From: Phallusia mammillata
Lineage: Eukaryota
Assembly: GCA_965637545.1 (NCBI GenBank)
Contig: OZ281501.1
Location: forward strand, 17,484,001-17,548,000
Length of the DNA: 64,000 nucleotides
Direction of reading: 5' to 3'
Both the position numbers and the translations under genes were made by a program. Shown piece by piece: positions 14,873 to 41,059 of this stretch. Each line of letters opens with the position of its first letter. Position 1 is the stretch's first letter. The notes under the pieces were generated by a model, which was given only the letters and a program-made list of their open reading frames with translations, was not told where the DNA came from and ran no database searches.

Positions 14873-15635
14873 TTAGCTATTGGAGGTATTGAACATTTTC
14901 GGTTTATCTTGTTTCGAATTGTATATGTAAGGCAACTTGTAAACATTGACATTGTAGAAACGGTGTAGCTGCAGCGCGTCTACCATCTCTCCACCAATTG
15001 CACCCTCAGCTTTGTCGCGCAATTTAACGTCTAAACGTTGCGCAGCTATTTCCCGTGAATATTTCAGCGCAATTGTGCTGCTACCAATTGCCCGGCGAGA
15101 TAAACTCAACTCAACACTCTGAGGCCGTATAGGTGCTAAATATTTCGGTAATGTATTGTCACACCTTTTGTTTTTGTTATCGAGCCCTAGCAGCCTGCTT
15201 TTAGGCGACCTTATGTCAACATTTTTTTACTTCTACCGAGTCCTAAAAAGTCCATTATATTTTTTGCATTTTTTGTTGATTTTATTGCATAACTTAGTGA
15301 AATAAATAAACATTGCACCGTAGTATAAATCGACAACAAGCGTACATTGGTGCATACATAGCAACACGTGAAACAGCAGAAACCAACAGCAATAACGTTG
15401 TGTAACACAATACTACAGCATTCGTTCAACAAGGTAACATAAAAGCTCAAATACAATTTAAGTTTTTTCCACATTTCATTTTAAGCGGTTTGACAATGTG
15501 GCATTTTAGGGAGGCATCATTTGTCTTTAGTATAGTGGTTATGGTTTTAAATATGTTTCTGTGTCAGTCATAAACAATTTGACCGTTTTTTACACAGACA
15601 ATGACATATATGATATATAGGCAGCACAATGACAT
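14873..15635 (-). CDS. Candidate secreted peptide precursor E (weak model, about 104 aa)
   Basis: Hydrophobic exon 15635-15584 (MSLCCLYIIYVIVCVKN, weak donor GTCAAA, phase 1) fits acceptor atttag at 15135 and gives A-PIRPQSVELSLSRR-AIGSSTIALKYSREIAAQRLDVKLRDK...NTSNS*. The frame is open for more than 110 codons. Confidence 0.3.
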
Positions 15636-15853
15636 GGCAAAACGGGCAGGCAATTTCAATCGGTACAAAAGCTTAAGGTTTGAAGGGAAAATAGATTAGG
15701 GTCCCGCCGGGCTTTCAATTAAGCGCACAGCAACCGGCCCCTACTACAACATGTTTTACAACATTTACATCACGCGTATTCTAGGCGGGATACTTTCTCT
15801 CGAATCTTCTCTGGCCGTTAGGACGTTTTCCGTTGTGTTCAATAGTTGTTTGT

Positions 15854-16478
15854 TCACATACACGCATTAACGGCCTGGGGTATTTTGTGGCGGCCGTGAA
15901 GTAACAAAAACGCGTCGATGCAAGCGTTGAGGCTTGATTCTGGTCCTCTGTGTCTGTAAAAAAATAAAAAATAAAATAAAATATGGGTTTTCGCAGTGAC
16001 TTTACTTGTTTTTTTCAAAAGAATTAACAAAAACTCTGATATCAGTAAAAAAGTTAACTATTTTTACAACTTTGTCGAAAATAGATTTTTCATGAATATT
16101 AGTCGAAACGTGAGGTTTTTCAAAATTTATCAAATAAAAACTTTTCTTACTTGTTAAGCCATTTGAGGAAAACTCTGACAGCTTTGACATCTTGGGTGAC
16201 AACTTGCATTTTTGTCATTTCTGCGTTTCTTCTCATTCTTCTTAGCAGACCGTTGTTGCTGTTCGACTGTTCCGTACTTTTTCTACAAGAGAAAATTACT
16301 TTTTTATTTTTTGTTTTAAATCACCAATAGAAATTAGGTTTAGGTTGAACATTACAAAAATTCCTAACATTATTTTATGTTTTATGAAATCGTCTTACTT
16401 TAAAGAGGCTGCGTTGCTGGTGCTAAGGTAGCACATGCAAAAGACGAAAACCAATACGAGTGTCTTGATGCTTGCCAT
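15854..16478 (-). CDS. Secreted peptide precursor A (103 aa), glucagon/PTH-superfamily-like
   Basis: Exons 16478-16399, 16282-16151, 15953-15854 with strong sites (gtaaga, gtaaga; ttgtag, ttttacag) and phase-2 introns. Protein: MASIKTLVLVFVFCMCYLSTSNA-ASLKKSTEQSNSNNGLLRRMRR-NAEMTKMQVVTQDVKAVRVFLKWLNKHRGPESSLNACIDAFLLLHGRHKIPQAVNACM*. Has a signal peptide and a furin-type RMRR site. Confidence 0.8.
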
Positions 16479-16584
16479 TTCTTTGTTAGTTACTTCGTAG
16501 ACTGCAGTAAAAGTTCGATGCAAAATAAAGTATTTCTTCGGTGCGTTGAGAGACTTCAGTTCGCTGGTAAACAGAGGAATGTAC

Positions 16585-16650
16585 CTCGGCTGAGCTTGTT
16601 TCGCTATCTGGTTAAGTATGACTTGCCTCAGCGCGCCACTCGCATTTATA
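16585..16650 (-). promoter_or_regulatory. TATA box and short non-coding first exon of precursor gene A
   Basis: TATAAAT at 16650-16644; donor GAG|gtacat at 16585/16584; 83-nt intron to acceptor tactgcag ending at 16502, upstream of the ATG. Confidence 0.6.
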
Positions 16651-18881
16651 CGCCAAGCCAGCTGACGTTCCCTTTTTCACCTCTCGGGGTCGCCAACGAA
16701 GGCGTGGTGCCTTGTCAAGAGCCGCCTGTTATGCGTCGTGGCATCCGTTTTCTGGGCTTCTGGGCGAGGGCCGAATTGCCCAATCCTGTTTCAGTTTAAC
16801 GGTGTTGCGTAACACTACACCAATTCGACGTTGGCACATTCCATGCGGCTGGAATCTGACTTTATCGCGCTATAATCGATCGTTTTCTGGTAGTCCAATG
16901 TTCCAAGGACCCGCTTACGCCCTTAAGTCAACACCCCTTTCGAAAGGCAGGTTCGTTTCAGGTCGATGCCCTATGATGTGTTAAACGCCGATCTGTCTTG
17001 TTATCCGCCATTTTTTGGTTTCTTTAAAGCAGCCTATTACACCGTGCCGAGGCAATGTTCTCTCCAGTGTGCTTGTCTTTCTGTTTGCCTACCGTTTTTG
17101 CTGGTAAGTGTTTCTAAAACGGGTAAAGGACATTAATGACGTCGCAGTTACGCAATAGCGACCGCGTGTCCTTGGTAAGTCGCGTTTCACATCCCATTTA
17201 TTTCGCGACGTTGTATGCTGTCCAAATAAAAGACGCCACACTTCTCGCGCTAGATACGTGATATAGAAATGTTCAAGGTCATTGAAAGATCGACGCCATT
17301 TTCAAAGTGATTTCTTAGCAGATTCGGTGCAACCGACGCTGAAATGGTGGTTGCATTTACGCACGTCCGTTTCGCCGTCAAACAGCGTTTAAACGGTTGT
17401 CATGGAAACGAAATTCAATTATCCCGATGCTCCATTGTCCCGGCGTTCTATTTTCACCCGCTTCGAGTGTTTGGGCTTAGCTTGACCGTTTCTCACTTGA
17501 TGTTTACCAGCTCTGTGGTCACGGGACCACAGAAAACTGCGGAAAAATTGAGGAATTTTGTAACAATTTCTGGTCCCATGTGACCCAGAAAAACACGAAC
17601 CCCCCACGATCCCGTTTTTTTGCACGTGAACATTCAGAAGTCGGTCAAGCGGTAGCGTTTCACATCCGTTCCAGAGCCGTTCTCTTTATGACATCACACC
17701 TTGTAGTTTCAAAACGGTTCAGAAAAACTATTTCGGGTTGTCGGCTAAGTAGTGTTTAGTGCTTTCATCAGACCGTTGTGTCGTTGGCTGAGTGGTTTCA
17801 AATGTTTTTAATAGCTTACAATATTGATAATCAATGTTTGATTAAGATACTACTTTTTTGTCCAGAGATAAAATAGTTTCGCTCATTATTAAAAGCAATA
17901 CTCAAACGGTATGTGTTCTTCGTCTTATTAACACACATAACATGTTTGTCGTCAAATGTTTGCATTTTATGTGTGTATTAGCTTTGCATGCCTTAAAAAT
18001 ATTTGTCATGATGCCACATACTTTAAAAGATTTCCTTGGATCGGTACAAAATATTTAACCAAAGCACCACGTGTCGCATTTTTCCGTTTTCCCAAGTCAT
18101 TGCAATCATAATGACTCATCACTTTTTTACCATGAGTGTCCTTCTCGAGTAACGTCGAAAACACTGGTCCGTATGACGTAACAAGACCCCAACCCGGTCC
18201 CTGTTACGTCACAGTGCGCGTTTCTGTTGGAAAGCGACATTAAATTCCTTTTGGGTGAACTGTATTGGGAATTGGTGATGCGGTTTTCCATTCGTACGTT
18301 GTTTGGCAGTGATTCAACGTATTTATCGATCGGCGATAACGACTTATACTGTATGTGTTATACTATATGTGTTTTGTTAAAAACGTGCGTGGTTTTCTCG
18401 TGATATCATCTTACACTGCATCCGGAAATACGATTTTGTTCCCATTGTAGACTCTTGTAAACGTCTATACCGTGTATGATTGAATACTTTGTATCATTAA
18501 TGGTATAGTGCAAGTCTCAAGTGTATCACTGGTATTAATGGGTACTGTGGTTGAATAATTTGATTAATAATAAAGCATTTCGGTTCAGTGTACTTGATCT
18601 TCTTTCGCGAGAAAACCTTGACGTTGTTGGCTTTCTAGCGGGTTTCTAAATTTGTGGCAACAGCAAAGTGGGCCGAGTAATCTTTTTACAAGACAAGATA
18701 GCAATCTACACAACTGTGCCATGTTTGCTAATGGTTGGAAACACGCACAATCTATATTTTGTCAATACATAAACACTTTCTAAACCGGTAAAACGAGCAC
18801 GCGTCAAAAGTTTGAAACCTGACTTTCTTGCCTGAATGTCGACTTTGCTTGACAAGTATGTCCCACGTCGAATTAACCATT

Positions 18882-18996
18882 TCAAAAAGGCTCGCTGCAT
18901 TCTAAGTGGTTGGCCAAATTCTGTAAGGCAAGTTCTCTGATTTTGTGCGTTGGCATGTCACTCGTATATCTGGTTTTCGGTAATCTTTGATCTTTA
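18882..18996 (-). CDS. Orphan peptide-encoding exon B (paralog of D; possibly pseudogene)
   Basis: Acceptor tttttgtttaag, phase-2 entry as in A/C/D. Reads KDQR-LPKTRYTSDMPTHKIRELALQNLANHLECSEPF*, which aligns with the D peptide. An overlapping frame reads MQRAFLKWLIRRG, like A. No signal exon found. Confidence 0.4.
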
Positions 18997-21900
18997 CTTA
19001 AACAAAAACTTGTAATAAATAAACAGTTGTCAGATATTATCACTAAAACGAAAGCTTCTCGGCCAATCAACATACAAATCAAGTCCGTTGCAGGGAAGGT
19101 AGAAACCGCCCACCATCTAACCAATCACGGTTTAACATAACTTTGAGCCAGCAGGATCTAAAATGTACGTGATATATAAAGATCAACTTTCACTTACGAC
19201 TTTTTTATTGGACACAAATACACATAACGTGAAAGTTTGACATTAAGTTGGTCTTTTCATTTTGCGAAGAACTGTTTTTGGTGTCTTCACATTTATCGAA
19301 AACTTTTAAATGGCATGGTTTACACTGTAATCCAAAACGTATGCGTTAAAAGACAACTTAAAATAAAAATATTTAAAATTTACCAGAATTTTTCTCGTAA
19401 AATACGTCAACGACATTTTACGTTGTTCTAACATCCGCTTAACATTTTGTTATCTTAAACAAACTGAAATTTATCGATTACCTGCACCGCAAAGCGTGTA
19501 TAGCGTAGTTAGGTCCCCCTTTTTCTATGAAAGTACCTCAAGTACTTTGGTAACAGTGGTAAGAGATCAATAAAGTTCTAAAATTGTCGCTGTGAATCTG
19601 TTTGCGTTCGTGTCATTTCATGTTGATTCTAAAAAGTGCCACTTCGACAAGCACTCAAGTCCTGTTATCTTCACACGTCACGTTTGTTCTTGTGATTACG
19701 TCATGATATCCTTAAAATTGGAATGTTATCAATGCACGGAAGTATTCTGCACACAAGTTAGCGTAGGCTGTGAAAAGACCCTTTTTATAAGGCGACTGTA
19801 TTTGTCGCTTTGCGCACGCCGCATTTCCAAAGTGGTTCCTTATCGTTGCAGCTTAAGCGCGCTATTTATACTTTGGCCCGATATTTAAAGGTCTCTGTTT
19901 GACAAGTTGGCATTATTTCATCCAGCCCCATATCTCGATGGCAATTCAACTGTCCGAAATTCGTGTAGTCATGATCTGTAGAGTAGCTGGGATTTGAAAA
20001 TCGCCGATAACCTTACGAAGAAACCTCGTCGAGCTGTCGTCTTCAAAAACCACCGATGTTTATCGTGTTTTGTTCATAACACGCAAAAGTGTGAACGCAT
20101 GTCACAGCTAATGGATAATACCTTATCAAACCTTTGATCCAACGCATAATTTGTCAAGTGTTGAGCTTTCACGCAGTAACGTAACCTTTTGGCTCGCTAA
20201 AATTCCGGTTTGCGGCTTTGCCCTGCGCATGCAAAAGAGTTCATTGTCTACAAAGGGCAATTCAAAAGAGACAAACACCGTTATTACTCAAATTCTTGCA
20301 GACGAACCCGTGCTGCGTCAAAGCGCATGTAAAGCATTTGACCATCAAGTTAACAAAGGGTATTTGACACCGTTTACGCATAAGGCTATGGAGAAGCACC
20401 CTGGTAAAGTGTTTTAAAGCCAACATTGGTCGCCTGAGTTAATACAATAGTTAGAAGTACACACTTCGTTTAGAACCGTTGGTTTCAGGTTCTTAGCTAA
20501 AGCTGTGAGTCAGGGTGGAAAACTGCAAAATGTGGTCAAAAACTCGTTTTCTGGAAAAAGGTCGCCCACCCTCTAATCTGTTCAAACATTACTCACAATG
20601 GATAACCACAAACGCACGCATGTGTTAAAGTCTGTTCAAACCACCCACATAACGACCACTAAGACTGATAGATTTTTCGGTGCGTTTAGGCTTCCGTTTT
20701 ATTTATCAAACACCCGGTTTGGGTTCAATGCCCCCTACACACATGTAAATTATAATACCAGTGTTTATGCAATATGTGTCACCGTCGTTGTACAACAATA
20801 ACCTGTAGCTTACTGTCCATTAACAATGTCTTAGGATGCCGTTATTTTCTCCACCATGAGCTACACCATGTGACCATATCGCGTATTGAAATTGCCAAAA
20901 ATATCCTTTTCGATGGACAATGTATTTAGGCCTCAATGATTTTGAAAAAGATATCGCAGAATCTTTGGAATTCACTTATGCTCAAAATATCCATGTGCCT
21001 GAAGTTCGGAAATTTATTGTAAAATCTTGTGCAACCACTATGTCATTATCAGCTGGTATTTGTGGTTTTTTAGATGTCCTATTTTTAAGTGTTATACATG
21101 GTCAGGCTGCCCCAGGTACGCGCCATAAAAAATTACGTTGGGGAAAATGGCAAAATACGGAAAGACGGTTGTTTAAATTAAATGTGTCAGATCGACATAG
21201 TTTCAATTTTTTGTTTGACTGACTTTTTTCAGACTATATAATCAACAATTGTATTGTCGTTGTGCAATATTCTAACACCTAACAAAAAAGCCTTTGGCAA
21301 TTATCACCAATGAGGTAGATGTGTCTTCTCTGCCTACCCAAGATAATAACATAATCGCTTTTTTTGGTATTTTAATTTTCATATTTGTTATGATTAAAAT
21401 AGTGGCTGTTAACGCCCTACACAAATTAGTGGTGAAATTACGTCATGCAAGGAGCGTTGTTCGTAAACGCCTGAAGTAAAGATTAAATAAGTGACGCATA
21501 AAATCATTTATTTCAGTAACGAATATTTGTGCGATTAGTGTTTAATTATAAACACGAGCGCATAGTAAAAATGCGGCGGTTTGTATTTTCAATGGGATAT
21601 TTTAAATCATTTTGTGTGACTGTATTTCTTCCGTCTGAAAATTATTTCGTTTCCCAAATCATTGATCAATCAGTTTTTTGTTTGCAGAAACTGATGATGC
21701 CTGTTTTATATGTTTTTTAGACATATAATTTAGAAAAAAGATTTATGCTTTGTACCTGTTTTTTTATTAAACAGTACAAATATTTAACTGATTCGAATCA
21801 AGAATCTTTCTTTATCATTCTATTGTCTGCGGTAGATTCTTTAGAAACAAAAATGTTTTAGCCAGTTTGTTGGTTTGAACTTATAATTTTGTTCGAGACA

Positions 21901-24424
21901 AAAAAAAGGTTTGGGAACAGTTTACGGTTTGGGCGAAAGCCTCATTGACTTATTTGGTGAAAAAGACACCAGATATTTCAAACTACTAAACCTCGTACTT
22001 CAAGCCTTTAACTACAAAAATCATTACCGCCTTTATCTTTTATGTTATCGTAAAAACGTTCGGATGGAAGGCCGTGTTCTTGCGGTTTGTAAGTGAAATT
22101 ACGATGAACACGAAACCATCCAAGTAGTGTCTTCCATATTATGGGTGCGGGGACGTTTTTCCACTGAAATCAATTAACCTTCGGTTCACCTTTACGGAAC
22201 CAATTCATGTTTTGAAGTGATTAGCTGCACGAGTGATTTTTAAGATAGAGCTTAAGTTTATTTAGTCAAAGGTCTTTCCTGCCCTGCCCGTACCTGGTTG
22301 GCCGAAACAGAAAGGTCTGTTTATATTTCGCGACAATAAATCCTTGTGTCGTGCGTCGTCGCATCTTCTGGAAATAGGAATCACGCACCTTATTCCTATT
22401 ACTAAATAGGTAACAGATTTTGTAGCTTGTTGTGGTCGTAAGTGTGGAGAACTGATCATCTGTTGCGCCAGCTTAAAAAAATCATGACCCTGACTGTGTT
22501 TGGCTTGTGAAGATCTTTGAAAATGTTCTGTGTAACCTTAAAAAACAGTATACAACATTCATATTTTGCCCTATTTTGTGGCAGTGAACGTTTTCGGTTT
22601 GTGGATGGTTTTGAAAAAAATACTGTCTTTTCGACTTGTAGAGCATGGTAATTTACATCAAAAGTGTATTTTGTTTACTAATTTCTGTTTTTAGGTTGTT
22701 AACTGTGTGATCTAAAAATCCAAAAAAACATTCAAGTTTTGAGCTAGCATTAAACTCATTCTTAATCTGTAAGTTATCGAAGTTTTTCCACTGATCATGC
22801 ATGTACAATTTAGTTTGAATTGTCTAGCTTCGTTCAAAACGTAGCGATTATGTTTTTACTAAACTCGTATTAAGTTATATCGTTTACCAAAGTTTTGACA
22901 TCGCAAAGCGTATAAAAGAGTTTTTTATTTATTTCTTATACTTGTTCCTATTCCTATGTTTCCTGTATTTCGATTCCCACTTAAAAGTCAACATTACCAT
23001 ATTTTGAACAAAAACGTTTCCACAGATTGTTATCAGGTCTTGACTCCTGATGTTCTACGGATATTCACTTTGCTAAACATTTTCGAGGTACTTAAATCGC
23101 TCGTATTCACGCCAGTTCCATGTTCCTTTTTATAAATCAAGTGTCAGAAATCATTACGGTTGTTTCCAGCTAAATGTTTTTTCTCAAGTTTCACATCAAA
23201 GCTTATTATTGTACAGCGGGTTTGGGGTTTTGTTTCACCGCCCAAATTTACGAATATTTTGCATCATTTCTTGATGATGATCTGAGCTTTAACTTCACGG
23301 TTTGTTTGTGTTTTGTTTCGTTTTCTTGTAAAAATTGCACAAATTGGCAACGATATCACTTTTGCAACGCTAGTTTTTTTTTAAATGATGTAGAAAAAAG
23401 ATAATTATACGTACTTACTTTTTGGCACAAATACCCCGTTTATAAAAACATAGATAAGTGATATTTTTGATGTTTTTGTACAAATAAAGCACCTTTCTCT
23501 CTTACCCAATCTTTAAAAGTGTTATTTTTGCCCGTTTCCGCTTTATTGGTTCATTAAATGCCATATTATCACGTACGAGCATAGGACATGGCATCATCAC
23601 ACATAAATCCAATTGATGTTTGTAAAAAAGTTTTTCCGGCTCGATGTTTACTTTGCTATTGTGAATCCGACGTTTTTGGGGAGAAATTGCTCTCCCCTTG
23701 TGCTTATCGTCTCCTGTTGTTGTATACGTCCCTTTGATTCGCTTGTGTGCCATTGTTTAAGCACGTCACGCTTTATTTGGTCTGTGCGACGTCGACTTTT
23801 CCACATTCACGCAATCTCAAATTTGCGAGACCCTTAGCGATTGCGCAAAAAAACGGCGAAAAAATGGTGTTTGTTTTGACGGTTGTCATGGCGAAAAAAA
23901 ACAACAGTTTCAGGTCATGCCGAGTCTGCCATTTTTCTCAGAGTTGGACCCGTTTTGACCACAATGATTTGTTTTTACCTGTCTGGCAATGTACGCACAT
24001 ATTGGCTACTTCAACATTGTACATACACTTGTATTTGCTTGTTTAACTTGCCGGTATTTCCAAATGTTTTAGTTTAGCGCCATTCGTTTTTGTTTAAACC
24101 TTTTAAAAAAATGTGGAACTCAAAAGTTGGCTTATTTTAGCTTTATTGCTACAGGCAAGTGGCAACGAATTGTACCGTTCAATAATTACCACGTTTGAAA
24201 TCTTTGCATGAAAATTGCTAACTTTATGTTAATTTTGCATATCATGTATGTATTAAACCTACATTATTTCCATTTTTTCAACCTATATAGTTTATTCGAT
24301 TGGTTAGGGTTCGAACCCGAATTTTATTGTAATCTTATCCATTTGTCGAATATCTCTTGTCATTTATTTTTGTTATTGTTAATGTAATAATTAAGAAACG
24401 GAAAAAGGGGGCACGTAAATAATG

Positions 24425-24545
24425 AGGGAAAAAAGGCATAATTAGGCCCAAAAGTTGGCGAAATTGCGGTCCGAATGATGCATAACGTGAAGTCAGGCCC
24501 GTTTTATTTTAACTTAGGTCCGAATCCGGGCCGACTTTCATCTGT
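24425..24545. repeat. Fragment of the GGCCCG/CCCGAA-rich hAT MITE family (see 50347-50738)
   Basis: Shares aagtcaggcccg / ttaggtccgaatc / gggccg motifs with copies near 34855-35000, 38881-39075 and 50347-50738. Confidence 0.55.
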
Positions 24546-24574
24546 TTACAGCTTAATTAGTAAATGGATACATC

Positions 24575-24754
24575 CAGTGGTGGGATTCAGCCGGTTCGCA
24601 CCGGTTCTATAGGACCGTCTCACGAAATTTTATGAGATCAGCGAACCAGTTAGCATTACTGGTTACTGTCAATGGACTTTTTGTAACAGAACCGGCTAAA
24701 AAATATTACTTTTGTGATAGAACCGGCTCACACAAAAATTGAATCCCACCACTG
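24575..24754. mobile_element. hAT MITE, 180 bp, recent insertion
   Basis: TIR CAGTGGTGGGATTC / GAATCCCACCACTG and perfect 8-bp TSD GATACATC (24567-24574, 24755-24762). Confidence 0.92.
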
Positions 24755-28124: not shown

Positions 28125-30202
28125 TTAGTTCGTGGGCAAATTCTCGCAATGAGATACATCTGTTTGCCCTTCAATGAACGCTTTAAGTTGGCAGTTCTTT
28201 TTGGGGTTGGTTTGCGCCCATCTGTAATGCAAAAAATAGAATAAAAAAGATACTCATGGCATACGCACCACAAAAAGAACCTGACAGAAGTGGCGAAAAT
28301 ATATTTTTGTAATTTATTTGTTGGATTTTTATCCTAATATTTTTGTTTTCCAGATATTTTTTCAAAAACATTAAATATAATCATGTTTTTTAAAGTGTAT
28401 TAAAATCTCCACCTTACGCTATGTATTTTTTACGCTACACGCTTTTAGTCATGGTATTTACTACATTTCCGCCACCAAGCGACGAAACGTAATGAAAATA
28501 GCGATCCTAACGTTTTGGACCCAATCAAGCCCATTTGACGCCCCATTTACCGTAAACAATGATCCAATAGTATTCCTTTATTGGTTGTCACACCCTAGAA
28601 GGCAACTTATTGTTATTCTTTGCGTTGGCAACTCAAATACTTTATAAATACTTGTGCGTATTGAAACTGTGTACCACAGGTGGCTACTCTAGAAATGTTT
28701 GTGGTGTCAAATTTGATTGCTCCTCCCAGAATTAGCCCTCGTCCTTTTGCTAATATCATCCCATGCTTTGTGTCGTTTGTTTAAACGTTTGTTTTGCGCC
28801 TCCCCCACGCTCGGGGTCATAAACCGATTGACGTGGGCATATCGTACAAGACCATGTTTCGCAATATGATTACACTGTTGGGAAACCTTCATATAATGGC
28901 GATCGAAAATGGGCGTATAGACACTTCCAAATTTGGTATTGCGAAAGAATTTCTGACATCATATAAAGCTATGTTGTCAATTTTGGCTTTGCGACCATAG
29001 TTATTAATCTTATTTGTCTCCGTGAATCATACTATAGTCATACTAAAAATCATACTATTTCTTTAATTATTTTTCAATAATATGTTACGATTTTTTTTAG
29101 AAAAAAAAAACGCTTTTGAACTAAAATTTATTTCAATAAAGGACTGATGATGCCATTTATGCCATTTTCAGTTAAAACGCTATGAATTCATTTTACTTCG
29201 CAGTTTGGCACATATCGTTTTTGTTCAAGCAAACAAACTATATTGTTTTACTTTAGGGTTTTTTAAATGGAATTCATGTTACTTCGGAAAAAAAATTTCT
29301 TACTAGGAATTCTACAATCAATTTATTTCACTTACTCCGCAAATTTGGAGAGAATCTGATCGAGTCGCGAATCAAGCACTTCCATTAAAATTTCGGAACC
29401 TGCGTAGGATGATAATAAGCGTTTCGAGGCTCTCTTGTGGTGTCGCCTGCCGTTGTTCATTTCGTGAAGAAATTCTCGCTCGATTTGGCGAAGAAATTTT
29501 CGTTCTTTAACGTGGTGCGGCTGCAGGACCTTGATTCTACAAACAGAATGAATTGTTTCAGATCTTTTGTCGTTTTTAGTTTATTTTTTTGTAGACAAAA
29601 TTATTAAAGAACACGCAATAACTATTTCATTTTTATTAAAGATGTACAAAATATTCCGTTTGCTGAGTTTATTCGGCCGAATTGGTAATTTTCACGAAGA
29701 TTTCGTTTCGGCCGAATAATTAGGTGTAATTCGGCCGATTCCGAACCTCTTACGAACACAGACTTATCGCGTTAAACATGTCTTTTCTGCGTAACAAGGA
29801 ACCACACAATGTTTTTAATCGCAATAACGCAAATGTAGTCCAAGATTTTTTGTTTATGGGCTACAGATTTCGTTATTTTGTTGTGACAAAAGAAAATTAA
29901 CTTACAATTCCGACAAAGTGGTCAGCATACTGTTGGTGTCAGTTTGTGATGATTCTGCAATATCTTGTTGATGACTTGACCTGTCAGTAAATAAAACACT
30001 CTTGTTAAACTACATAAACCACCAAAATTCACAGAAAAATGTCATAGAATCATGTAACACCTATTACAAATTGTTTTTTATGTTTCTTCTCAAGAACTTT
30101 TTAACTTTTCGGCATACTAACTTACCGTGAGACTGGTGACGCAGAACAATAAAGTATAGATGCAATAACAAATACGAAAAGCGGGAGCCACGTTGTCGAC
30201 AT
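28125..30202 (-). CDS. Secreted peptide precursor C (149 aa), PTH/glucagon-superfamily-like
   Basis: Exons 30202-30126, 29980-29906, 29536-29336, 28221-28125; all donors gtaagt, all introns phase 2. Protein: MSTTWLPLFVFVIASILYCSA-SPVSRSSHQQDIAESSQTDTNSMLTTLSELIKVLQPHHVKERKFLRQIEREFLHEMNNGRRHHKRASKR-LLSSYAGSEILMEVLDSRLDQILSKFAEWAQTNPKKNCQLKAFIEGQTDVSHCENLPTN*. Confidence 0.85.
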
Positions 30203-30612
30203 TTTAGTTGCTTTTGTATTTTGCTTTGAATCAAAATGTCTTTGTATATTGCTTCAACAATGTTTCAGAAACAAACAGTATTTCAATGACAAAATGTACT
30301 TTCGCAATAACACAATCTGCAAAAAAACATGATGTTTGATCACAATGGTATTTTATAACTTTTTTGCGTCACAGCTACTTATTTATCGATGTATAAGAAG
30401 TGCCCATTCGGTAGAAAAAATTTATCGATAAATGCAAAATCTCTCTTTAAGCATTCAACGTGCAACCTGGTTCGACGACAGCGACAACAGTCACCTAAAC
30501 AACTATAACAGCGAAAAGTCGAATCTGACTTGAATATTTACAACTACACGTAAGCAAGCGTTGGTTTCAACTATCGCTACAGCTTCTACCAATCTCGGCC
30601 CAGGCTTGTGCC

Positions 30613-30619
30613 TTTTATA
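30613..30619 (-). promoter_or_regulatory. Probable TATA box of precursor gene C
   Basis: TATAAAA on the minus strand about 410 bp upstream of the ATG. A strong acceptor (tttttttgcag, 30317) precedes the ATG exon. E-box CACGTG and GTGATGTCAC motifs lie just upstream. Confidence 0.5.
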
Positions 30620-32840: not shown

Positions 32841-33182
32841 CAGTGGTTCTAAACCTTTTAAGTTTGAGGACCGGTAAACTTTCAAAACAAATTTTGCGGA
32901 CCGGTGGACTTTCAAAATCAACCCAAAATGAAATCACGACAAAAATATGCAATTCAAAAGAAGTATGAAAAATTCAATTTAATAAGAAGTTGCTGGTATC
33001 TGTTTGATATCATCAATGTTAAACGCGGTTCTAATGAAGTTTCTGCAAGGCGAAGTAGAGCGTTGACTTCCACACGATTTCTCTGTCTTCAACATCTTGC
33101 ATTTTGCAGTTAAGATATAAAATTGTAATATATTTGGCGGACCGGCAGGAAAATTGACGTGGACCGCGGTTGAGAACCACTG
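32841..33182. mobile_element. hAT (Charlie-like) MITE, 342 bp
   Basis: TIR CAGTGGTTCT(A/C)AACC; degenerate 8-bp TSD gtttaaag / gtttactg. Confidence 0.8.
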
Positions 33183-34854
33183 GTTTACTGTATAGAAGAT
33201 TTATTAGGAAAACATGCTGTCAGGCACATCAAATGGGGGTTATATTGCTGCAAAACGGCATTTCTAGTTTGGATAACTTTGGTACAAGTTGTAGCTTACG
33301 TTGCAAGTACAAAGGTCAGTAAACAAAGTTGCTTACTCTGCTTCTCAACCACAAATCTGCGGGTTCACCCTTTTCAGCTTCTTTAATCATGTTTTGGTAT
33401 TGCGCAACTTTACTCCGGTGTTGTTTACTGCTTATACATGTTTGAACACAACGCCAACAGCTGACTCTGTATTGCACTTTAGCCTTTAACAACTTCGTTG
33501 TGGTAAATTGTGTTGTAACTTAGGGGAATTACAAACCCGATTGCCGACTTTCTAAATTCTCTGCATTTTTTTCTTTAAAGAAGTTTTTCATAATGAACAA
33601 ACAACCGTTGGTGTTTAAACGCAAACATTCGCTTATTTCAGAAACCCAACAGACTTTCCGATAAAACAGCAAAATATTGGGCGGGTGTGGGGGATAAATT
33701 GTTTACTATTCAATGAACATCTACCAATTTCCAATTTTAAGCCACAGGCAATAAATAATTCAAACGTGCTCATTTTTTTCAAATGTCCCACCGCAAAAGT
33801 TTGATGTTGTTTGGACATTTCGCCGTTTTGCGTTGTCGTTTTTGCATTCCTTTCACCTATATTAACCACACATGTCAGAATATGTAGGAATGTGTTTTCA
33901 ACACGTGTCAAAAAACTTTACAAAACAATACAATTCAAGCAGAAACAAATATTACTGTTTCACTTGTTTTATTGATCAAGCGATTTTCTCTGTTTTTCAC
34001 ACGTTTCTTTGATCGTTAAAATGATGATGGTGGCCCTTAATTGTCTCGTACGTAAAAGGTTCGAGGTTTCCTTAATTTTAAAAAAATGTTCATCGCAATT
34101 TTGGCACTTTTGTTATCATTTGAAAAGTTATGGCAAGAGTACGTGAGGTGCAACGATCTACAACATGAAAGCTGATGTTATCTTTTGTTTAAGGAAGTGA
34201 TTTTAAACGGACATTTTGACCTTTGCAACTTGAATGTGTTTCCATGTCGAAGCATGTGGTATCAATATTAAATTTCCGTTTCGTAATCTGATTTCTCGCA
34301 AACATCAAAAACATCACGCAGCTTAATCTTTCAGAGGCAATGCGTGAAATATTAGATATTCCTTAAAACTCCAGTTTAATTAGATATCCATTCGGGGTTT
34401 TAAGCCATTTTTGGACAAAATGGTTAAAGCTAAATAATTCTTAATAGTTTTCCGAAGTGTTTTAATTCGGTTTGTTGATCGTGTTGTTGTTGTTGTAAAA
34501 CCATATTTACTCGAATTAAAAACGCGTTTTGATTGAATGTAAAGATCAAACACCTTCATTACAATGCAGATGGTGGGTTTAATTAGATCCTTCGTGTTGT
34601 GGCAAATCCGCGCCTATCAAAAAAAGGCGCCACGGAGTGAATTCGTTGCTTTTGCTTACTGGTATAAATGCACACAAATATTAACCTTATTTAAATATCG
34701 GGTGGATTTTTCAATGGATAAGACTTTTTTTGGATTACTGTAATCAAGGCTGCAGTTCTAAAGTTCAACTCCAAAACCTTAACGAAACCCGTTTTTTACA
34801 AAGCAAAACCCTTATTGGGCACGAACATTTATGATATTACGGCACAAATGATAC

Positions 34855-35000
34855 TGAGTGTAAAGTCAGGCCCGATTCAAGCCAGTTATATTTAAACTCA
34901 AACTTGAACCCTACTCTACTTTCAAGGCTGACCAGAAATTCCTGTAAAGAATTTTCTCGTCGGTGGTTCAGCCCGTTATAAGTTAGCGGCATTGTTTGAA
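34855..35000. repeat. Degenerate fragment of the 50347-50738 MITE family
   Basis: gagtgtaaagtcaggcccgattcaagcc matches gagtgtaaagttaggtccgaatcaagcc near 50637. Confidence 0.6.
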
Positions 35001-36950
35001 ATTTTGCAAGGATGCAGTGGTAGATCTTATCAAATAATCAAACCATTCGTTTAACCATAAGGGTTTTCTCTCAGCAGACGATTAATATCTTTCTCATGCT
35101 GGGTTCGATTGTAAACACAGTATCATGTTAATGCAGTTCGCATGTTTGTTGTGCTTACGCTGATATTGGAAGACACTTAAGACTTCGCCAAGACTCGGAT
35201 GCACTCAAATTCGGGTTCGGCCTATATGACGAAACAGCAACTCTTTGTGATGTCACTGCGTGTTGGGTCTTGACGCAATTTTGGAAATAAGACTTCTGTG
35301 TTTGAAGTTTGTCTTGTTTGTTTGTGAAACTGTGTTAATGTTTTACGTTCTGTTTAACATACTGCGTTTAGTGATTGACGTCAACAGGGTCTAAGAAACG
35401 TTACAAACATTCTCACGTTGGTTTCTTCACAAATTTTTCGAATGAGAACAAATTCAATACATTCCTTGTGTACTATTGTCGAAAGATTTTCAGCAAACTA
35501 CATGAGCAGTAATTTGAACCAGGATCCAAAAAGTTGCTTTTAGTGTCATACAAATTCACAGAATCACCCAGAACAACTTGTTCTGGGTCAAAACACCCTA
35601 TTTTCGGTCAGTTACTACACTTTCGACGAAACCTTGTTCTTCGAATTCGTTGATGGTCCTAACTTCACAAGCCCTATTGTCTATTCGTGTCAAACCTATG
35701 AATCACCGAAAGATGATTTGTTAAGCAATTTATCCTTGTTTTTGAAAGCGACTGCTGCTTAATATATTACTGGCCAGTTTTATGGGTAACAGGTGCGAAC
35801 ATTTGAAAATTTGTACTGAAACTTTTATCGACCGCCCAATCTCTGACTTGCACTGCTGATATGACGTCACAATACGTTATTATTTGCTAACTTGTGAGTC
35901 ATTTGATTCTTATCTGCTGTTTCCGAAATACTGACCTAATGTTTTTGTGCCGACACAGACAGAATGCTTTACAATTTCTGTTTGACAAAAATTAATTTGT
36001 GACCATTATTTTTTCTACATATATTTTTAGCTGTTATAAAAGTGGCATCCTATTTTTGAACAAACAGGTATTTTGGCTGAAAACGTTGTGCCTTTCTTAA
36101 CATTTATGGCTATTTTAGGAGTTTTTGAAAGCAAAATTTTGATAACTGTTCGCCAATCGCCTGTACTTATGGTCCTTTGCCCCTAAGTCATCGACTTATA
36201 ACTCAATCATTATCTGCCTTACATAATCGAGCGTACAATTAATATGTGGAACATTCATTACAAAAATGTAAAGGCAAATCGACAGATCTATTCCGAATTG
36301 ATATTTCCATTCAACGTGTTAAGATACTGCAAGTTTGCGTCTAAATTTTGCAGTTAAATGGAATTTGTTTATTTGCACAAGGGTAACATGAAGTAATTCC
36401 AAACACCAATAAAAACCACTTTTGGGAACTGATCGCTTTACAATAGTTGCAATCAACACAGAATACGAAAATCAGGTAAGAAAAAAACAAACAAGGTTTT
36501 TATCATGAAACAGACGGAAACAAACTGGAAATAAATGACAAGTAGTTAAAGCAAGATGTCCATGTTATACGAAGTCAATGGGAAACGTCAGTCTTCATCT
36601 GCAAAGCCTGAAAACTTCCATTAAGTCATGCACAGTCCGAACGCGGGGAATCATTTCATCAAGACAGGGCGAGGATACACCGACGCTAAAAAGATAGATA
36701 TAATTTCGTTAGATTTAATGTTCTTTGAGATAATTGCAACAACATTAAACTGAAATTTGACGGTTATACAATCAAGTGTATTAAAATTTGGTTGTACAAA
36801 AATATTGTTCCACATTTTCAATGCCGATAAATTATTATCGGTTGCATTTACACCGTTGAAATGTGTTTTATCACTCCGTTTGTATCTATTGGTAGCCGCA
36901 CAGGCTTTTGTCGCTGTATTAGAAATTTTTGTTTCAAGATTTGCCATTGT

Positions 36951-36989
36951 CCTGATGAAGGTGTCTTTTATGGGATGTCGGAACGTCGG
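36951..36989 (+). ncRNA. Degenerate minimal hammerhead motif, Penelope-like remnant
   Basis: CCTGATGAAG-GTGTC ttttatgg GATGTC-GGAACGTCGG; same layout as 6122-6161 but GAAA changed to GGAA and stem II weakened. Confidence 0.45.
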
Positions 36990-38880
36990 TTGTTCATAAT
37001 AAAACTGCTGGAAGAGCAATACTCGTTTATTAAGTATAAATAAACGAGTGGCAGCAAAAGCTTATTTATTCACGTTTAATTTGTCGGTTTGTGGCAAATA
37101 AACCTATTTTGTTTGTTCAAACTGGAACGCTATGGCTGAATAGGATTTAAAGTTCCATTACTAATGGATTAAAAATCACGTTCACAACTCATCAATCAAT
37201 CGGTTGTGTACCGCAAAATTTGGCACTTCGCGGCAATCTTGGAATCTAACATTTGCAGTAACTATGTTTTGCAGCTATTTGGTTTTTGCTACGGTTTACA
37301 GCAAGTATCAAAGACATCAAAATATTTTCGCTGCTTCTGATTATCTTTATGTGTTTGTGTCATAATTGCATTTATCTCTGTTTGCCCATGTATTTTTATG
37401 TCTAAAAATTGAGGGGATACTGATAAATCTTTCTTGAGGATCAAAACAGCCTTGTTCGAAAATTTGACAAATTGCAGTGTTTGTTCACTTTAAAAATTCG
37501 CTATTAAGGTAACTTTGTCTTAGCGTGAAAATCGCTTTCGTCAACAGTTTGGCATTGTTGCACCAAAGTAACCCATTGGTGTGTTGACCACAATGAAGTT
37601 AGTGTTGGTTGAGTCTGCCATGTGCGACAAACATTATGCGCTGATAACCATCAGATAGCTTTTGTTTATTTGTGTTTACCGAACCTTTCACTGCCTTGCA
37701 AAGCTTTCACGAGTCCTGTTGATCCCAGACGACCCGATCTTGCGGATTTGATTGCGTTTGTTGATGGTTGATTCGCGGGTGCAAAAAATGTTTTTCCATA
37801 CACTACCGTGCAGCACGTAACCGAAACTTCGATTTTTGTAATCAGTTTTTTATGCAACGTTGCGAAATTTAGTAAAAAAGCTAAGGTAAATTGCACACAA
37901 GGCTATGACCCCAGGTCGTTTGCAAATTGAATGTTGTTTTAGCTGCACATTTTTCACAATTGTTTTAAGTGCGCATTAAAAGCTTCGCGTGCAGTTTGCG
38001 TTATCCTATTTTCTCCACTATTTGCCAGAGCAATGACAATTCCAATGTGGTATTACATTTTCTAGTTGCGGCCAAACCCTTATGATTAACCCCATGGTCG
38101 CCCATGATTGTAGTGTGACAGCAAATCACATTGGCGACAAGCTGCAAACGTTTGTTTTGTTGGTCAAGGTAATCTACTACGATTTTGCAGCAAAGAACTT
38201 GTTTACTAGAGAAACGCACCGCGCCGCAGCCCAGCTAAAATCTGTATGCTAACAAACACACGTGAATTGATGGTAAGCAAAACAACACAAATTACATGAC
38301 TGGACGTTTTTTCCTGGTGTAATTTCTCCACCAGATAACACAAGCTCACCAGGTAGCCGCCCCATTAGCTTATCCCCATTTACAGGTCACTGACCTTAGG
38401 GTTAATGTATGAAACTTGGCTTGATGTGCGATACCATCTCGTTTTATTCGGAGAACAGACACCTTGAGAATGATTGACGTTTTATCAGGTCACTGGCGTC
38501 TTTGTTGTGACCGCGTCCTGGCTTTATTGCATTTAAATTTGCTGATGATTTGCGCGGGATTTTATTGCGTTCGATGTGCCAGTCGTGGCAGTAAAATACC
38601 CCGACCACTGTAATTGGTCTACAGTCTGGCCTGGCGTCCGTTATGTGAATATATAGAACCGGGTGATTTACTGATGTACTTATTGTGACATTGAACCCTC
38701 CATAAAACGTTTTGAACAAAAGGAGAAATTGACCAAACGCAAACGAAGTGTCTATTTTTACCTTAATGTATCGTTTTTTGACCCCATTTGGCCGCCATAT
38801 TGCTATTTTGTTTTGTCAACGTGGCAAAAAGCTATAACGTCATCTGTTTTACAATTCTGACATATACATTTGCTCTTTTG

Positions 38881-39075
38881 TAGAGTTGTAAGTCGGGTTG
38901 GGCTTTTCGGGTCGGGTTTTGGCTTAAGTTTGAATAAAACGGGCTTGATTTGGGCCTGACTTTATACTCGGCCTCATTGATGTTGCAATTTCACCAACTT
39001 TTAGGCCTAATTCGGGTTTCGTTTTAACAAAAAATCGGATTTGAGGACCCCAAATCAGGCTTGAAAATCTGCTTT
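38881..39075. repeat. Inverted partial copy of the 50347-50738 hAT MITE
   Basis: tagagttgtaagtcgggttgggcttttcgggtcggg is close to the reverse complement of the right end of the 50.7-kb element. Confidence 0.7.
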
Positions 39076-39378
39076 GCTGACCGATCGAAAATGTCGTTTG
39101 AACTATTTGGAGATTTAAAACTGATTTGTCGCGTAACGAGTCACTCGCGTTTATCTGTTTGGAAAAAAAATCGCCCCACTTGCTTCTTTGACCAAATAAA
39201 CCGTAACAAAAACAAGGCGTAAACGAATCCGTAAGTTGTCAGCTTGTGTGTGTGTGTGAGACATTGTACAAATAATATGGACAAAATCGCGTAAAACATT
39301 TTTCATTCTCTCGGTGTGTGTAAAAAAAACTTATGCTTCGTGTATAAAGACCCCGGTGGTAAACGTTTACCTTTAGGC

Positions 39379-39728
39379 CATGGGTCGGCAACCTTTTGAA
39401 CTCCGCATCCCGGTTTATTTGTCATGTTAAAATAGTAATAATGACCTTGCGTGCCAACATTGTTTTGTACAACGATGGTTTATGCCAGTTGATTTGAATA
39501 GTAATTAACAATAAACGTATAAGTAATTAACAATAGTAAAAACAGACATATTGGTATTTGCAACTTGCATTTTTGGTATTATTAAATCATAACTACATGA
39601 AAAAAAACGATGTATTAGTTTTAATTATATCAAGCTCTTTTAATATGAAGTTGAATAGTACGAGCAATGATATACCATCTCGCGTAGATGCCAGGGACTG
39701 TCTTTAACTTGTGTTGCGACTCGGCCTA
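39379..39728. mobile_element. Possible decayed hAT MITE
   Basis: Left end catgggtcggcaacc resembles the CAGGGGTCGGCAACC-type TIR; right end is degenerate. Confidence 0.35.
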
Positions 39729-39806
39729 ATACTTAAATGGTTTGTGGGAGTTTTCGGTCAAATTCTGGGACCAATTTTAAACCAGTACCAACCGCATTCA
39801 ACTTAC

Positions 39807-40829
39807 TTTCCCGCAAAATGAGCTGCGAGCTTCACTTGCGCCTCTTTGTCCTTCATGTTCGCAGCCAAGTGGGTAAAGTCCCCCATCGGGTAGCGTTTCT
39901 GCACCAGTTCGTCGCTCCGCTTGCTGGCGCTGTTGGTATCTTCCTCTGCTGCCGTATCCAGCTCGCTGGCGTAACGGGGTTCGTAGTTTTTGAGTAAAAG
40001 GTCAAGAAAGTCGGAGTCATCAAGTGACAATAACTGCTGAATCAGCAATAAATCTTCAACCATTTCGTTTTCGGTTGGCTGTTTTTCTGGCATTGTATTG
40101 GCCGGTGTGTCGTTTTCGGGTCTGTGATTGAAAGTTGTATGTTTGGTAAAGCCGATGCAAATGTAAGATAATATATAGGATGTCGATTTCAATCGTTTTG
40201 GGTATGTTGTGTAACAACCACAAATTAATTCTACGATAAGTACTGTTTGCGTATAACATAACCTTGCATGGTAATGGAGACCCTATAAATAGGACGTTGA
40301 AGCGTTGGTAAAAACAATAGATTTGCCAGAAGAGAATCGTTTAGTTCGTATGTTATGCCTGGCAGCAACGGTTCATATACTTGCACACTAAGTTTGATTG
40401 CGAACGTTCAGGTCTTACAAATAGCAAACCCAGTGTAAAGAATTTATTTTCAAATCTTTATAGTCAGGATCTGTCCAGTCCAAGTGTTTAGCTTCAACCT
40501 TATTGTTATTGCTGTATTTACTAATAGTGACATAGCGGTAAAGAAATGCTGGAAATATGGGCACTTTTGTACTTTTAGTCCCGAAATTATGCAGTTTGAA
40601 CCCCTACTACCTTTTTATTGAGTCTAGAGGAATCGAGACATTGATTATAATTAATTCATGACAATTTAACGACGTGGTTGTTTGCGGTACAGAGTTGCCA
40701 TCGAGTTCTTTGAAAACACCGACTTTTCTTTCATCATTTAAACCCAACCTACCTTTCTATAATAGATGCAGCTCTCGTGACAGCAATGACAGATAAACAG
40801 ACGATGACTGTGCGCAATAAATTAGCCAT
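39807..40829 (-). CDS. Secreted peptide precursor D (about 131 aa) encoding a secretin/PACAP/glucagon-family-like 27-mer amide
   Basis: Exons 40829-40753 (MANLLRTVIVCLSVIAVTRA-ASIIE, donor gtaggt, phase 2) and 40121-39807 (acidic pro-region ...SASKR-SDELVQKR-YPMGDFTHLAANMKDKEAQVKLAAHFA-GK, donor gtaagt). Ends GK* both unspliced and if spliced to the acceptor at 39154. Confidence 0.85.
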
Positions 40830-41059
40830 AGTTTGATATTGATGTACAATATTTTCGTTGTTTTACAAAAATGTGTTCTGAAAAAGACGAATTGTTAAAA
40901 ATCACTAAGTTTGTTATTAGCTATCCCAGACCAAAAACTACGCTGTTACTTTGAATAGTTCGTTTCTTAACTCAGACTTGATAACAGGTGTGCATGAGCA
41001 TGACACACTCCGTTGTCAAATTGTCTCAATTTGAAATCTATCATAAGTATCACAAATAC

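What the first reader, a model, noticed from the sequence alone, without database searches (positions are those of the whole stretch)
14873..40829. Hidden tandem cluster of class-B1-GPCR-ligand-like (secretin/glucagon/PACAP/PTH-type) peptide precursor genes
Seen: between PIDD1 and the IF gene lie at least three co-oriented small genes (A, C, D) that the ORF track misses, plus an orphan exon (B) and a weak candidate (E). A, C and D share one architecture: a 25-26-codon signal-peptide exon ending in (A/S)-S/P-x-x-(K/R) at a phase-2 intron, symmetric phase-2 peptide exons and di/multibasic cleavage sites. A and C have TATA boxes. Established: vertebrate secretin/glucagon/PACAP and PTH hormones are encoded in modular exons and released at KR/RR sites, and invertebrate chordate members are few and highly divergent. 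Inference: this is a tandem array from local duplication that mixes glucagon/PACAP-like and PTH-like peptides. It may be an unannotated tunicate hormone system reflecting the ancestral state of these families.
Basis: partly seen in the sequence, partly recalled or inferred. Interest (0 to 1): 0.92.

Follow-up and report, generated by a model that had tools for sequence, protein, structure and literature searches.

The report
Sea-squirt secreted peptide-precursor gene cluster
Three small unannotated genes beside PIDD1 in a sea-squirt genome encode secreted, hormone-precursor-like proteins, and one is shown to be spliced and expressed; their proposed kinship with secretin/glucagon/PTH hormones failed every homology search and remains a weak but testable lead.

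Summary
The genes are largely real; the hormone-family label is not shown.

**What holds**
- Three minus-strand genes (A, C, D) each start with a 25-26-codon signal-peptide exon that ends at a phase-2 GT donor.
- All internal exons are multiples of three, and all three genes carry dibasic cleavage sites.
- For D, a 561-nt error-free contig from an RNA-like public run joins 40753|40121 and 39807|36685 at GT..AG borders. The DNA run lacks these joints.

**What was wrong**
- D does not end in Gly-Lys-stop. That stop is the TAA inside a GTAAGT donor that is in fact used.
That exon carries two cysteines.
- A and C have matching predicted last exons. Each gene would therefore release a peptide of about 58-63 residues: a helical segment followed by a probable disulfide loop.

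**Homology to secretin/glucagon/PACAP/PTH**
- Pfam, PDB sequences, two billion-scale protein searches, the ESM Atlas and a local family HMM gave no support.
- Three leads remain. D begins Y-P-M-G-D-F-T directly after Lys-Arg. A carries F-L-K-W-L. Human SCT lies about 170 kb from PIDD1.

**Verdict:** an orphan ascidian family of prohormone-like genes. I put class-B1-ligand identity at about 0.2. The scan's earlier notes on this same window made the same claims.

The parts
40753..40829 (-). Gene D exon 1: ATG plus signal peptide, 25 codons + 2 nt, phase-2 donor AG|GTAGGT
   Evidence: Signal-exon scan. The run X1 contig covers 40816-40753 and joins to 40121.
39807..40121 (-). Gene D exon 2 (315 nt): acidic pro-region, two Lys-Arg sites, then a 28-residue segment beginning Y-P-M-G-D-F-T
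   Evidence: Translation. The X1 contig covers it fully with 0 mismatches. Its donor AA|GTAAGT is used.
36595..36685 (-). The 3' UTR runs at least to 36504.
   Evidence: X1 contig piece 36685-36504, joined to 39807 across a 3121-nt GT..AG intron. Translation.
30126..30202 (-). Gene C exon 1: signal peptide, 25 codons + 2 nt, donor CG|GTAAGT. TATA boxes lie upstream at 30619 and 30357.
   Evidence: Predicted; no RNA laid here.
29906..29980 (-). Gene C exon 2 (75 nt, phase 2 to 2)
   Evidence: Predicted.
29336..29536 (-). Gene C exon 3 (201 nt): several dibasic sites and two helical segments. The donor GA|GTAAGT overlaps an in-frame TAA, as in D.
   Evidence: Predicted by analogy with the D donor shown.
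28125..28221 (-). Gene C exon 4 (predicted): Lys-Lys, two Cys 15 residues apart, stop
   Evidence: This exon pattern occurs by chance about once per 7 kb per strand, so support is moderate.
16399..16478 (-). Gene A exon 1: signal peptide, 26 codons + 2 nt. A TATAAAT box lies at 16650, 172 nt upstream of the ATG.
   Evidence: Predicted.
16151..16282 (-). Gene A exon 2 (132 nt): R-R-M-R-R site, then a 25-residue amphipathic segment ending V-F-L-K-W-L-N
   Evidence: Predicted.
15854..15953 (-). Gene A exon 3 (predicted): 32 residues with two Cys 20 apart, then the stop. AATAAA at 15286.
   Evidence: It lies only 197 nt below the exon 2 donor, so a chance match is unlikely (about 0.03).
18706..18996 (-). 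Exon B: a relic of a fourth paralogue. One frame reads Q-R-A-F-L-K-W-L (motif at 18888), using different codons from A.
   Evidence: There is a stop just upstream and no phase-2 acceptor. No signal exon or Cys exon lies nearby.
14873..15199 (-). Candidate E: an open stretch of 108 codons, not shown to belong to the family
   Evidence: No Pfam family, no homologue, no signal exon, no Cys pair.

Best explanation
A, C and D are old tandem paralogues of an orphan, probably ascidian-restricted family of secreted prepropeptides.

Proposed route:
1. Exon 1 supplies a signal peptide that is cut around ...A|A-S.
2. The proprotein enters the secretory pathway.
3. Subtilisin-like proprotein convertases cut at Lys-Arg or Arg-Arg sites.
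4. The C-terminal product is released. It is 58 residues in D and in A, and 59-63 in C.

That product has two modules, each encoded by its own exon: a segment of about 26-28 residues that is probably helical, and a last module of 29-32 residues whose two cysteines probably close a disulfide loop. It most likely acts as an extracellular signal (hormone or neuropeptide) on an unknown receptor.

Shown: the exon structure, splicing and expression of D; signal-like first exons; dibasic sites; the cysteine pairs.
Inferred: the splicing of A and C, cleavage, the disulfide, secretion and the signalling role.
For: - Signal-exon scan: three top hits with the same strand, phase and length.
- A spliced, error-free 561-nt contig of run X1 has GT..AG joints 40753|40121 and 39807|36685. 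These joints are absent from DNA run X2, which covers the region contiguously.
- X1 held 0.27 of the locus words, roughly what the exons alone would give.
- Symmetric phase-2 exons and dibasic sites.
- Equal product length (58 and 58) with a penultimate Cys at position 57 in both D and A.
- D-A similarity is above shuffles.
- TATA boxes for A and C, and AATAAA downstream of A and D.
- No homologue anywhere, which fits a lineage-restricted, fast-evolving peptide family.
Against: - Only one contig, from one run of one study, supports expression, and only for D.
- Three other RNA-like runs held none of D.
- The junctions of A and C are untested.
- The two-Cys terminal-exon pattern is common by chance: 7 on the plus strand and 10 on the minus strand in 64 kb.
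- C is only marginally similar to A and D.
- No orthologue was found, so there is no evidence of purifying selection.
- Tissue of expression is unknown because run names are coded.
- D's mature segment is not notably amphipathic.
Confidence: 0.6

Rival explanations
1. The family is the very divergent tunicate counterpart of the secretin/glucagon/PACAP (and perhaps PTH) ligand superfamily. It would be a pre-vertebrate tandem array whose peptides activate the orphan ascidian class B1 receptors, with a lineage-specific C-terminal disulfide-loop module added.
For: - D starts Y-P-M-G-D-F-T directly after Lys-Arg.
- In an N-terminally anchored, ungapped BLOSUM62 comparison with seven vertebrate peptides, D beats shuffles (P = 7e-4). 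It ranks 7th of 29,215 stop-free 27-mers of the window and 1st of 488 that follow a dibasic pair.
- A carries F-L-K-W-L about 20 residues after its cleavage site (gapped test P about 0.02).
- Ciona has two GCGR-subfamily receptors and no known ligand for them (PMC7251081).
- In human, SCT is flanked by MUCDHL, DRD4, DEAF1, EPS8L2 and PDDC1 (PMC2880984). DRD4 is at 637 kb and PIDD1 at 799 kb of chr11 (PMC12127810). PTH is also on 11p15 (PMC2222243).
- True ligands of this class can be under 17% identical to the vertebrate peptides (PMC7251081, PMC7224569).
Against: - No Hormone_2, Parathyroid or CRF match at E <= 10, and no PDB peptide match.
- The local family HMM gives A 0.6 bits (rank 79 of 1705) and D -1.1 bits (rank 385).
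- D is not significant in gapped local alignment (P = 0.73), and A and C are not significant in the anchored test.
- Six non-coding 27-mers of the window outscore D.
- F-[LIVM]-x-W-[LIVM] occurs 9 times in the six-frame translation.
- D lacks the acidic or polar residue at position 3 and has no C-terminal cleavage or amidation site in the mRNA.
- No known family member has a Cys-loop extension (my knowledge).
- The scan has flagged many other hidden peptide clusters in this genome, so chance resemblance somewhere is expected.
- The synteny match was found after the fact, among three flanking genes.
Confidence: 0.2
2. The genes encode secreted effectors of another kind, for example host-defence peptides or tunic, gamete or mucus proteins. 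Signal-propiece-KR-peptide layouts and tandem, fast-diverging clusters are typical of those too.
For: - A's product is cationic (+4) with an amphipathic stretch (moment 0.55).
- D has a strongly acidic propiece (net -12), as in many antimicrobial-peptide precursors (my knowledge).
- The paralogues are highly diverged and no orthologue is detectable.
- The same genome holds several candidate antimicrobial-peptide clusters according to earlier notes (unchecked).
Against: - D's product is neutral and C's is anionic (-3).
- The pro-regions of A and C are basic, not acidic.
- The shared Cys loop and constant length point to a folded ligand rather than a membrane-active helix.
Confidence: 0.1
3. Only D is a working gene. 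A and/or C are decaying copies, or my and the reader's exon models for them are wrong.
For: - No RNA evidence for A or C.
- B shows that copies do decay here.
- C's last exon is a pattern that arises by chance about once per 7 kb, and no polyadenylation signal was found below C's stop.
Against: - Both have intact ATG-to-stop frames across three or four exons, with good GTAAG donors and pyrimidine-rich acceptors and TATA boxes.
- A's Cys exon lies 197 nt from its donor.
- A and D products are equal in length.
Confidence: 0.1

Closest known systems
Secretin/glucagon/PACAP superfamily precursors (Pfam PF00123 Hormone_2), including the amphioxus PACAP/GCG gene
   Same: - Signal peptide, modular exons and Lys-Arg processing.
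- A helical peptide of about 27 residues that starts right at the cleavage site.
- D has Tyr1, Gly4, Phe6 and Thr7, and A has F-x-x-W-L.
- A PIDD1 neighbourhood, as for human SCT (PMC2880984, PMC12127810).
   Different: - No profile or pairwise match.
- No C-terminal cleavage or amidation site in D's mRNA.
- An extra two-Cys module.
- Position 3 is Met.
- Receptor pairing is untested.
Parathyroid hormone family (Pfam PF01279) and the CRF family
   Same: C's exon 3 encodes basic-rich helical segments after Lys-Arg. PTH shares chromosome band 11p15 with PIDD1 in human (PMC2222243).
   Different: No match at E <= 10 in Pfam or to PTH, PTHrP or CRF chains in the PDB. The resemblance is limited to amphipathic-helix patterns.
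Ciona-specific neuropeptide precursors (CiLF, CiYFV, CiNTLP; PMC8936170, PMC6475428)
   Same: Ascidian-restricted secreted precursors with dibasic processing and no vertebrate homologue. Their receptors can only be found by experiment.
   Different: Those yield short multi-copy peptides. Here there is one long product of about 58 residues per gene, with a Cys pair. No sequence relation was found.
Prohormones with a C-terminal disulfide-looped product (somatostatin, MCH, urotensin II, natriuretic peptides) and the granin disulfide loop (my knowledge, not tested)
   Same: The Cys pair lies at the very C-terminus of the precursor. The loop of about 20 residues in D and A is similar in size to the chromogranin sorting loop.
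   Different: There is no cleavage site directly before the loop in D or A (only C has Lys-Lys there). No sequence match. The granin loop is N-terminal.

Membership tests
Secretin/glucagon/PACAP superfamily (PF00123) | Significant match to the family profile or to a member sequence | tested here: not met
   Pfam hmmscan at E <= 10 found none, for exons and for isolated peptides. phmmer against PDB chains found none. Local HMM with filters off: A 0.6 bits, D -1.1 bits.
Secretin/glucagon/PACAP superfamily (PF00123) | N-terminal His/Tyr-x-(Asp/Glu/Gln)-Gly-x-Phe-Thr directly after the processing site | tested here: inconclusive
   D reads Y-P-M-G-D-F-T, so four of five positions fit and position 3 is Met. 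Anchored test P = 7e-4; D is 1st of 488 dibasic-anchored 27-mers, but six random 27-mers score higher. A and C do not fit.
Secretin/glucagon/PACAP superfamily (PF00123) | Peptide of about 27-44 residues released by a C-terminal basic site, often Gly-amidated | tested here: not met
D's mRNA reads through into exon 3 (...F-A-G-N-V-G...), with no basic pair before the stop.
Secretin/glucagon/PACAP superfamily (PF00123) | Agonist of a class B1 GPCR | not testable with these tools
   Needs receptor assays. Ciona has two GCGR-subfamily receptors without a known ligand (PMC7251081).
Secretin/glucagon/PACAP superfamily (PF00123) | Conserved gene neighbourhood with a vertebrate member | tested here: inconclusive
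   PIDD1-like exons flank the cluster. Human SCT and PIDD1 lie about 170 kb apart (PMC2880984, PMC12127810). This is one shared neighbour, found after the fact.
Parathyroid hormone family (PF01279) | Match to the family profile or to PTH/PTHrP sequences | tested here: not met
   No Pfam hit. The only PDB hit for C exon 3 is ribosomal protein L29 at E = 2.2.
Secreted prohormone/neuropeptide precursor (general kind) | N-terminal signal peptide | tested here: met
   Hydrophobic cores of 3.16-3.31 (Kyte-Doolittle, 10-residue window), the top three of the whole window, with small residues at -1 and -3. SignalP itself was not available.
Secreted prohormone/neuropeptide precursor (general kind) | Di- or multibasic convertase sites that bound a product | tested here: met
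   D has KR at 93-94 and 101-102. A has KK at 27-28 and RR at 41-42 and 44-45. C has five sites. Actual cleavage is not shown.
Secreted prohormone/neuropeptide precursor (general kind) | Transcribed and correctly spliced | tested here: met
   Met for D only: the X1 contig with two GT..AG joints. A and C were not tested.
Secreted prohormone/neuropeptide precursor (general kind) | Expression in neurons or endocrine cells; the peptide detected | not testable with these tools
   Run and sample names are coded. No peptidomics data are held, and the motifs appear in no paper.
Cationic antimicrobial-peptide precursors | Cationic amphipathic mature peptide paired with an anionic propiece | tested here: not met
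   Mature/propiece net charge is +4/+5 for A, 0/-12 for D and -3/+5 for C. No gene shows the full pairing.

The most novel reading that the evidence does not exclude
The cluster is the long-missing tunicate ligand set for the orphan GCGR/PTHR-type class B1 receptors. It would be a tandem, pre-genome-duplication array lying beside PIDD1, as SCT still does in human and with PTH further along 11p15. Its peptides would keep only the activation-end motif (D) or the F-x-x-W-L receptor-binding motif (A), and would carry a previously unseen C-terminal disulfide-loop module.
Probability: 0.2. Interest if true: 0.85.

Novelty: new member of a known kind. Interest (0 to 1): 0.45.

Why it matters
Ascidians have class B1 receptors of the glucagon/PTH type, but no secretin-family ligand gene has ever been found in a tunicate genome or transcriptome. 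The old Chelyosoma PACAP clones are doubted (PMC7251081, PMC2880984).

This locus supplies three concrete candidates. They are now correctly modelled and can be synthesised and tested on those receptors, so the question can be answered at the bench.

Even if the answer is no, the locus documents an expressed, unannotated orphan family of secreted ascidian peptides with an unusual two-module product.

It also carries a practical warning. A phase-2 GTAAG donor always mimics a stop codon, which misled the 'amidated 27-mer' reading.

Tried and rejected
- **Protein searches with D exon 2, C exon 3 and ORF E:** nothing. These cover only proteins 0.55-1.75 times the query length. They did not even return the X1 transcript's product, so tunicate RNA assemblies are evidently not in that collection. 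A blank is therefore weak evidence.
- **phmmer of D exon 2 against 1.84 billion representatives:** nothing.
- **ESM Atlas feature search for the D and A peptides:** no named family of relevance.
- **Structure prediction of D's spliced 58-residue product:** the tool turned it away because a spliced sequence is not an exact stretch of the window. I did not send it to any other tool, so no model or fold search was made.
- **Literature search for the peptide motifs:** no paper.
- **Search for the amphioxus PTH and PACAP/GCG peptide sequences in held papers:** not available as text, so no comparison with the nearest invertebrate members.
- **Insect iPTH as a possible Cys-bearing relative:** rejected; its mature peptide is amidated and is not described as having cysteines.
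- **DNA-level duplication traces between the genes:** none; only a dispersed repeat and a 133-nt tandem repeat.
- **First attempt at the permutation script:** timed out and was redone.
- **Species:** earlier scan notes name Phallusia mammillata. I could not verify this.
Full report
**Observation**

The region is about 37% G+C with no long ORFs. Reading the minus strand and scanning the whole window on both strands for ATG + hydrophobic core + GT donor gave seven hits.

- The three most hydrophobic hits (3.16-3.31) all lie on the minus strand, at ATG 16478 (A), 30202 (C) and 40829 (D).
- All three are 25-26 codons long and end in phase 2.
- Their exon ends read A-S-x(1-3)-K/R.
- Exact borders were fixed. 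Internal exons measure 132 nt (A), 75 and 201 nt (C) and 315 nt (D), so all are phase 2 to phase 2.
- All three genes contain dibasic sites.
- TATA boxes lie at 16650 (A) and at 30619 and 30357 (C). D has none.
PIDD1-like LRR and ZU5 exons lie at 10.0-11.8 kb, and an intermediate-filament gene (PF00038) lies at about 50.8-56.5 kb. Both are on the minus strand. An AAA/CDC6-like exon lies at 341-529.

**RNA evidence**

The one run search found an RNA-like run, X1, holding 0.27 of the sampled words of 39750-40900. Two DNA-like runs held 0.81-0.97.

Laying X1, X2, X4 and X8 on 35201-41200 gave one X1 contig of 561 nt with no mismatch, in three pieces: 40816-40753, 40121-39807 and 36685-36504.

- Both skipped parts begin with GT and end with AG on the minus strand.
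- DNA run X2 covers 37003-41200 in one contig and shows neither joint.
- D is therefore transcribed and spliced, and the exon 1/exon 2 junction is exactly the predicted one.

The donor AA|GTAAGT at 39807 is used, and the frame continues (AA + C = Asn) into an exon at 36685-36595. That exon encodes 29 more residues with two cysteines, then a stop. A and C show the same in-frame TAA at their donors. No X1 contig enters the intron below 39807 (table 2).

**Gene models**

| Gene | Length | Exons (minus strand) | Status |
|---|---|---|---|
| D | 160 aa | 40829-40753, 40121-39807, 36685-36595 | both junctions shown by RNA |
| A | 103 aa | 16478-16399, 16282-16151, 15953-15854 | predicted |
| C | 149 aa | 30202-30126, 29980-29906, 29536-29336, 28221-28125 | predicted |

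- The predicted last exons of A and C also carry exactly two cysteines.
- After the last dibasic site, the product is 58 residues in D (Cys 36 and 57) and 58 in A (Cys 37 and 57). In C it is 59-63 residues with two Cys.
- A caution: a scan for 'acceptor, about 20-45 codons, two Cys, stop' finds 7 such patterns on the plus strand and 10 on the minus strand. The Cys exon is good evidence for A, where it lies 197 nt from the donor. It is only moderate evidence for C, where it lies 1.1 kb away.

**Are they paralogues?**

- D and A align better than shuffles: full length z = 3.9, signal exons P = 0.001, Cys exons P = 0.03.
- C is marginal (P about 0.04-0.06).
- No DNA-level repeat links the genes, so any duplication is old.
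- Exon B (18706-18996) reads Q-R-A-F-L-K-W-L in one frame, against V-R-V-F-L-K-W-L in A, with different codons. Exact F-L-K-W-L occurs nowhere else in the six frames.
- B has a stop just upstream, no phase-2 acceptor, and no signal or Cys exon nearby. It is best read as the relic of a fourth copy.
- Candidate E (14873-15199) is an open stretch with no family feature and no homologue.

**Tests of the class B1 ligand reading**

- Pfam at E <= 10 gives no Hormone_2, Parathyroid, CRF or other peptide family, whether for whole exons or for isolated modules.
- phmmer against all PDB sequences, which I expect to include many glucagon, GLP-1, PACAP, secretin and PTH chains, gives nothing for D or A. 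For C it gives only a ribosomal protein at E = 2.2.
- The word-indexed search of 5.8 billion clusters and the exhaustive search of 1.84 billion representatives give nothing.
- The ESM Atlas gives nothing relevant.
A ranked 79th (0.6 bits), D ranked 385th (-1.1 bits), and C did not appear.
- Gapped local alignment gives D P = 0.73, A P about 0.02 and C not significant.

**What still speaks for it**

- If the peptide is anchored at its cleavage site, as biology requires for this family, D scores above shuffles (mean score P = 7e-4). It ranks 7th of 29,215 stop-free 27-mers and first of 488 that follow a dibasic pair. Six non-coding 27-mers still beat it.
- A's F-L-K-W-L sits about where F-x-x-W-L sits in glucagon-type peptides. 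However, F-[LIVM]-x-W-[LIVM] occurs nine times in the window's six frames.
- Human SCT is flanked by MUCDHL, DRD4, DEAF1, EPS8L2 and PDDC1 (PMC2880984). DRD4 is at 637 kb and PIDD1 at 799 kb on chr11 (PMC12127810). PTH maps to 11p15.3-p15.1 (PMC2222243). A class B1 ligand gene therefore sits within about 170 kb of PIDD1 in human. I found this after looking at three flanking genes, so it carries limited weight.
- Sequence tests cannot exclude the reading. Amphioxus PACAP/GCG peptides are under 17% identical to the vertebrate peptide (PMC7251081). Insect iPTH is under 12% identical to PTH, yet it activates the PTH-type receptor (PMC7224569).
- Against this, the scan has flagged many other hidden peptide-gene clusters in this genome, so some chance resemblance is expected. 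The detected D mRNA also has no C-terminal processing or amidation site.

Weighing these, I put homology to, or function as, a class B1 ligand at about 0.2.

**Most likely mechanism**

1. The signal peptide is removed (inferred; small residues at -1 and -3).
2. Convertases cut at Lys-Arg or Arg-Arg (inferred).
3. A C-terminal product of about 58-63 residues is released. It consists of a helical segment and a module of about 30 residues closed by one disulfide (inferred from the conserved Cys pair and its constant position).

The products carry net charges of +4 (A), 0 (D) and -3 (C), and the propieces +5, -12 and +5. That does not fit the cationic-peptide/anionic-propiece rule of antimicrobial precursors. 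A signalling peptide with an unknown receptor is the best fit. The loop might serve folding, receptor binding or granule sorting. The comparison with granin loops comes from my own knowledge and was not tested.

**Novelty and limits**

- Reviews of ascidian peptides list no such family and no secretin-type ligand (PMC8936170, PMC7251081). The motifs occur in no held paper.
- I file the locus as a new member of a known kind: prohormone-like secreted precursors.
- Expression rests on one contig of one run.
- A and C are unverified.
- No orthologue could be sought in tunicate genomes with these tools.
- The species name, Phallusia mammillata, comes from earlier unchecked notes.

Noticed in passing
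window 50843-56541 (-): An intermediate-filament gene. Exon pieces match Pfam Filament (PF00038), including the rod 1A start [13 protein letters not shown] at 56299-56541. It is co-oriented with the peptide genes.
   Followed up: partly
window 5528-11835 (-): A PIDD1-like gene: an LRR exon (11065-11835), a ZU5 exon (10067-10366) and a death-domain-like ORF (5528-5719; no Pfam hit at E <= 0.01). In human, PIDD1 lies about 170 kb from SCT according to PMC2880984 and PMC12127810.
   Followed up: partly
window 341-2054 (-): CDC6/ORC1-like exons: an AAA ATPase match at 341-529 and a Ser/Pro/Lys-rich 284-codon ORF at 1200-2054.
   Followed up: partly
window 36983-37030 and 38884-38974; also 24490-24534 and 34792-34914: Short dispersed repeats inside D's 3.1-kb intron and between the genes. 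In DNA run X2 the summed contig depth there is 7,000-14,700, against about 90 elsewhere. RNA-like runs also hold copies. This is probably a high-copy mobile element.
   Followed up: partly
window 41089-41336: A tandem repeat with a 133-nt period (two copies found, 81% alike) just upstream of gene D, where no TATA box is present.
   Followed up: no
It has no Pfam family and no homologue, and is unexplained.
   Followed up: partly
same genome, about 59 kb before the window: An earlier first-reader note (s1-394880) reports another tandemly duplicated orphan secreted-peptide precursor nearby. Whether it is related to A, C and D was not checked.
   Followed up: no
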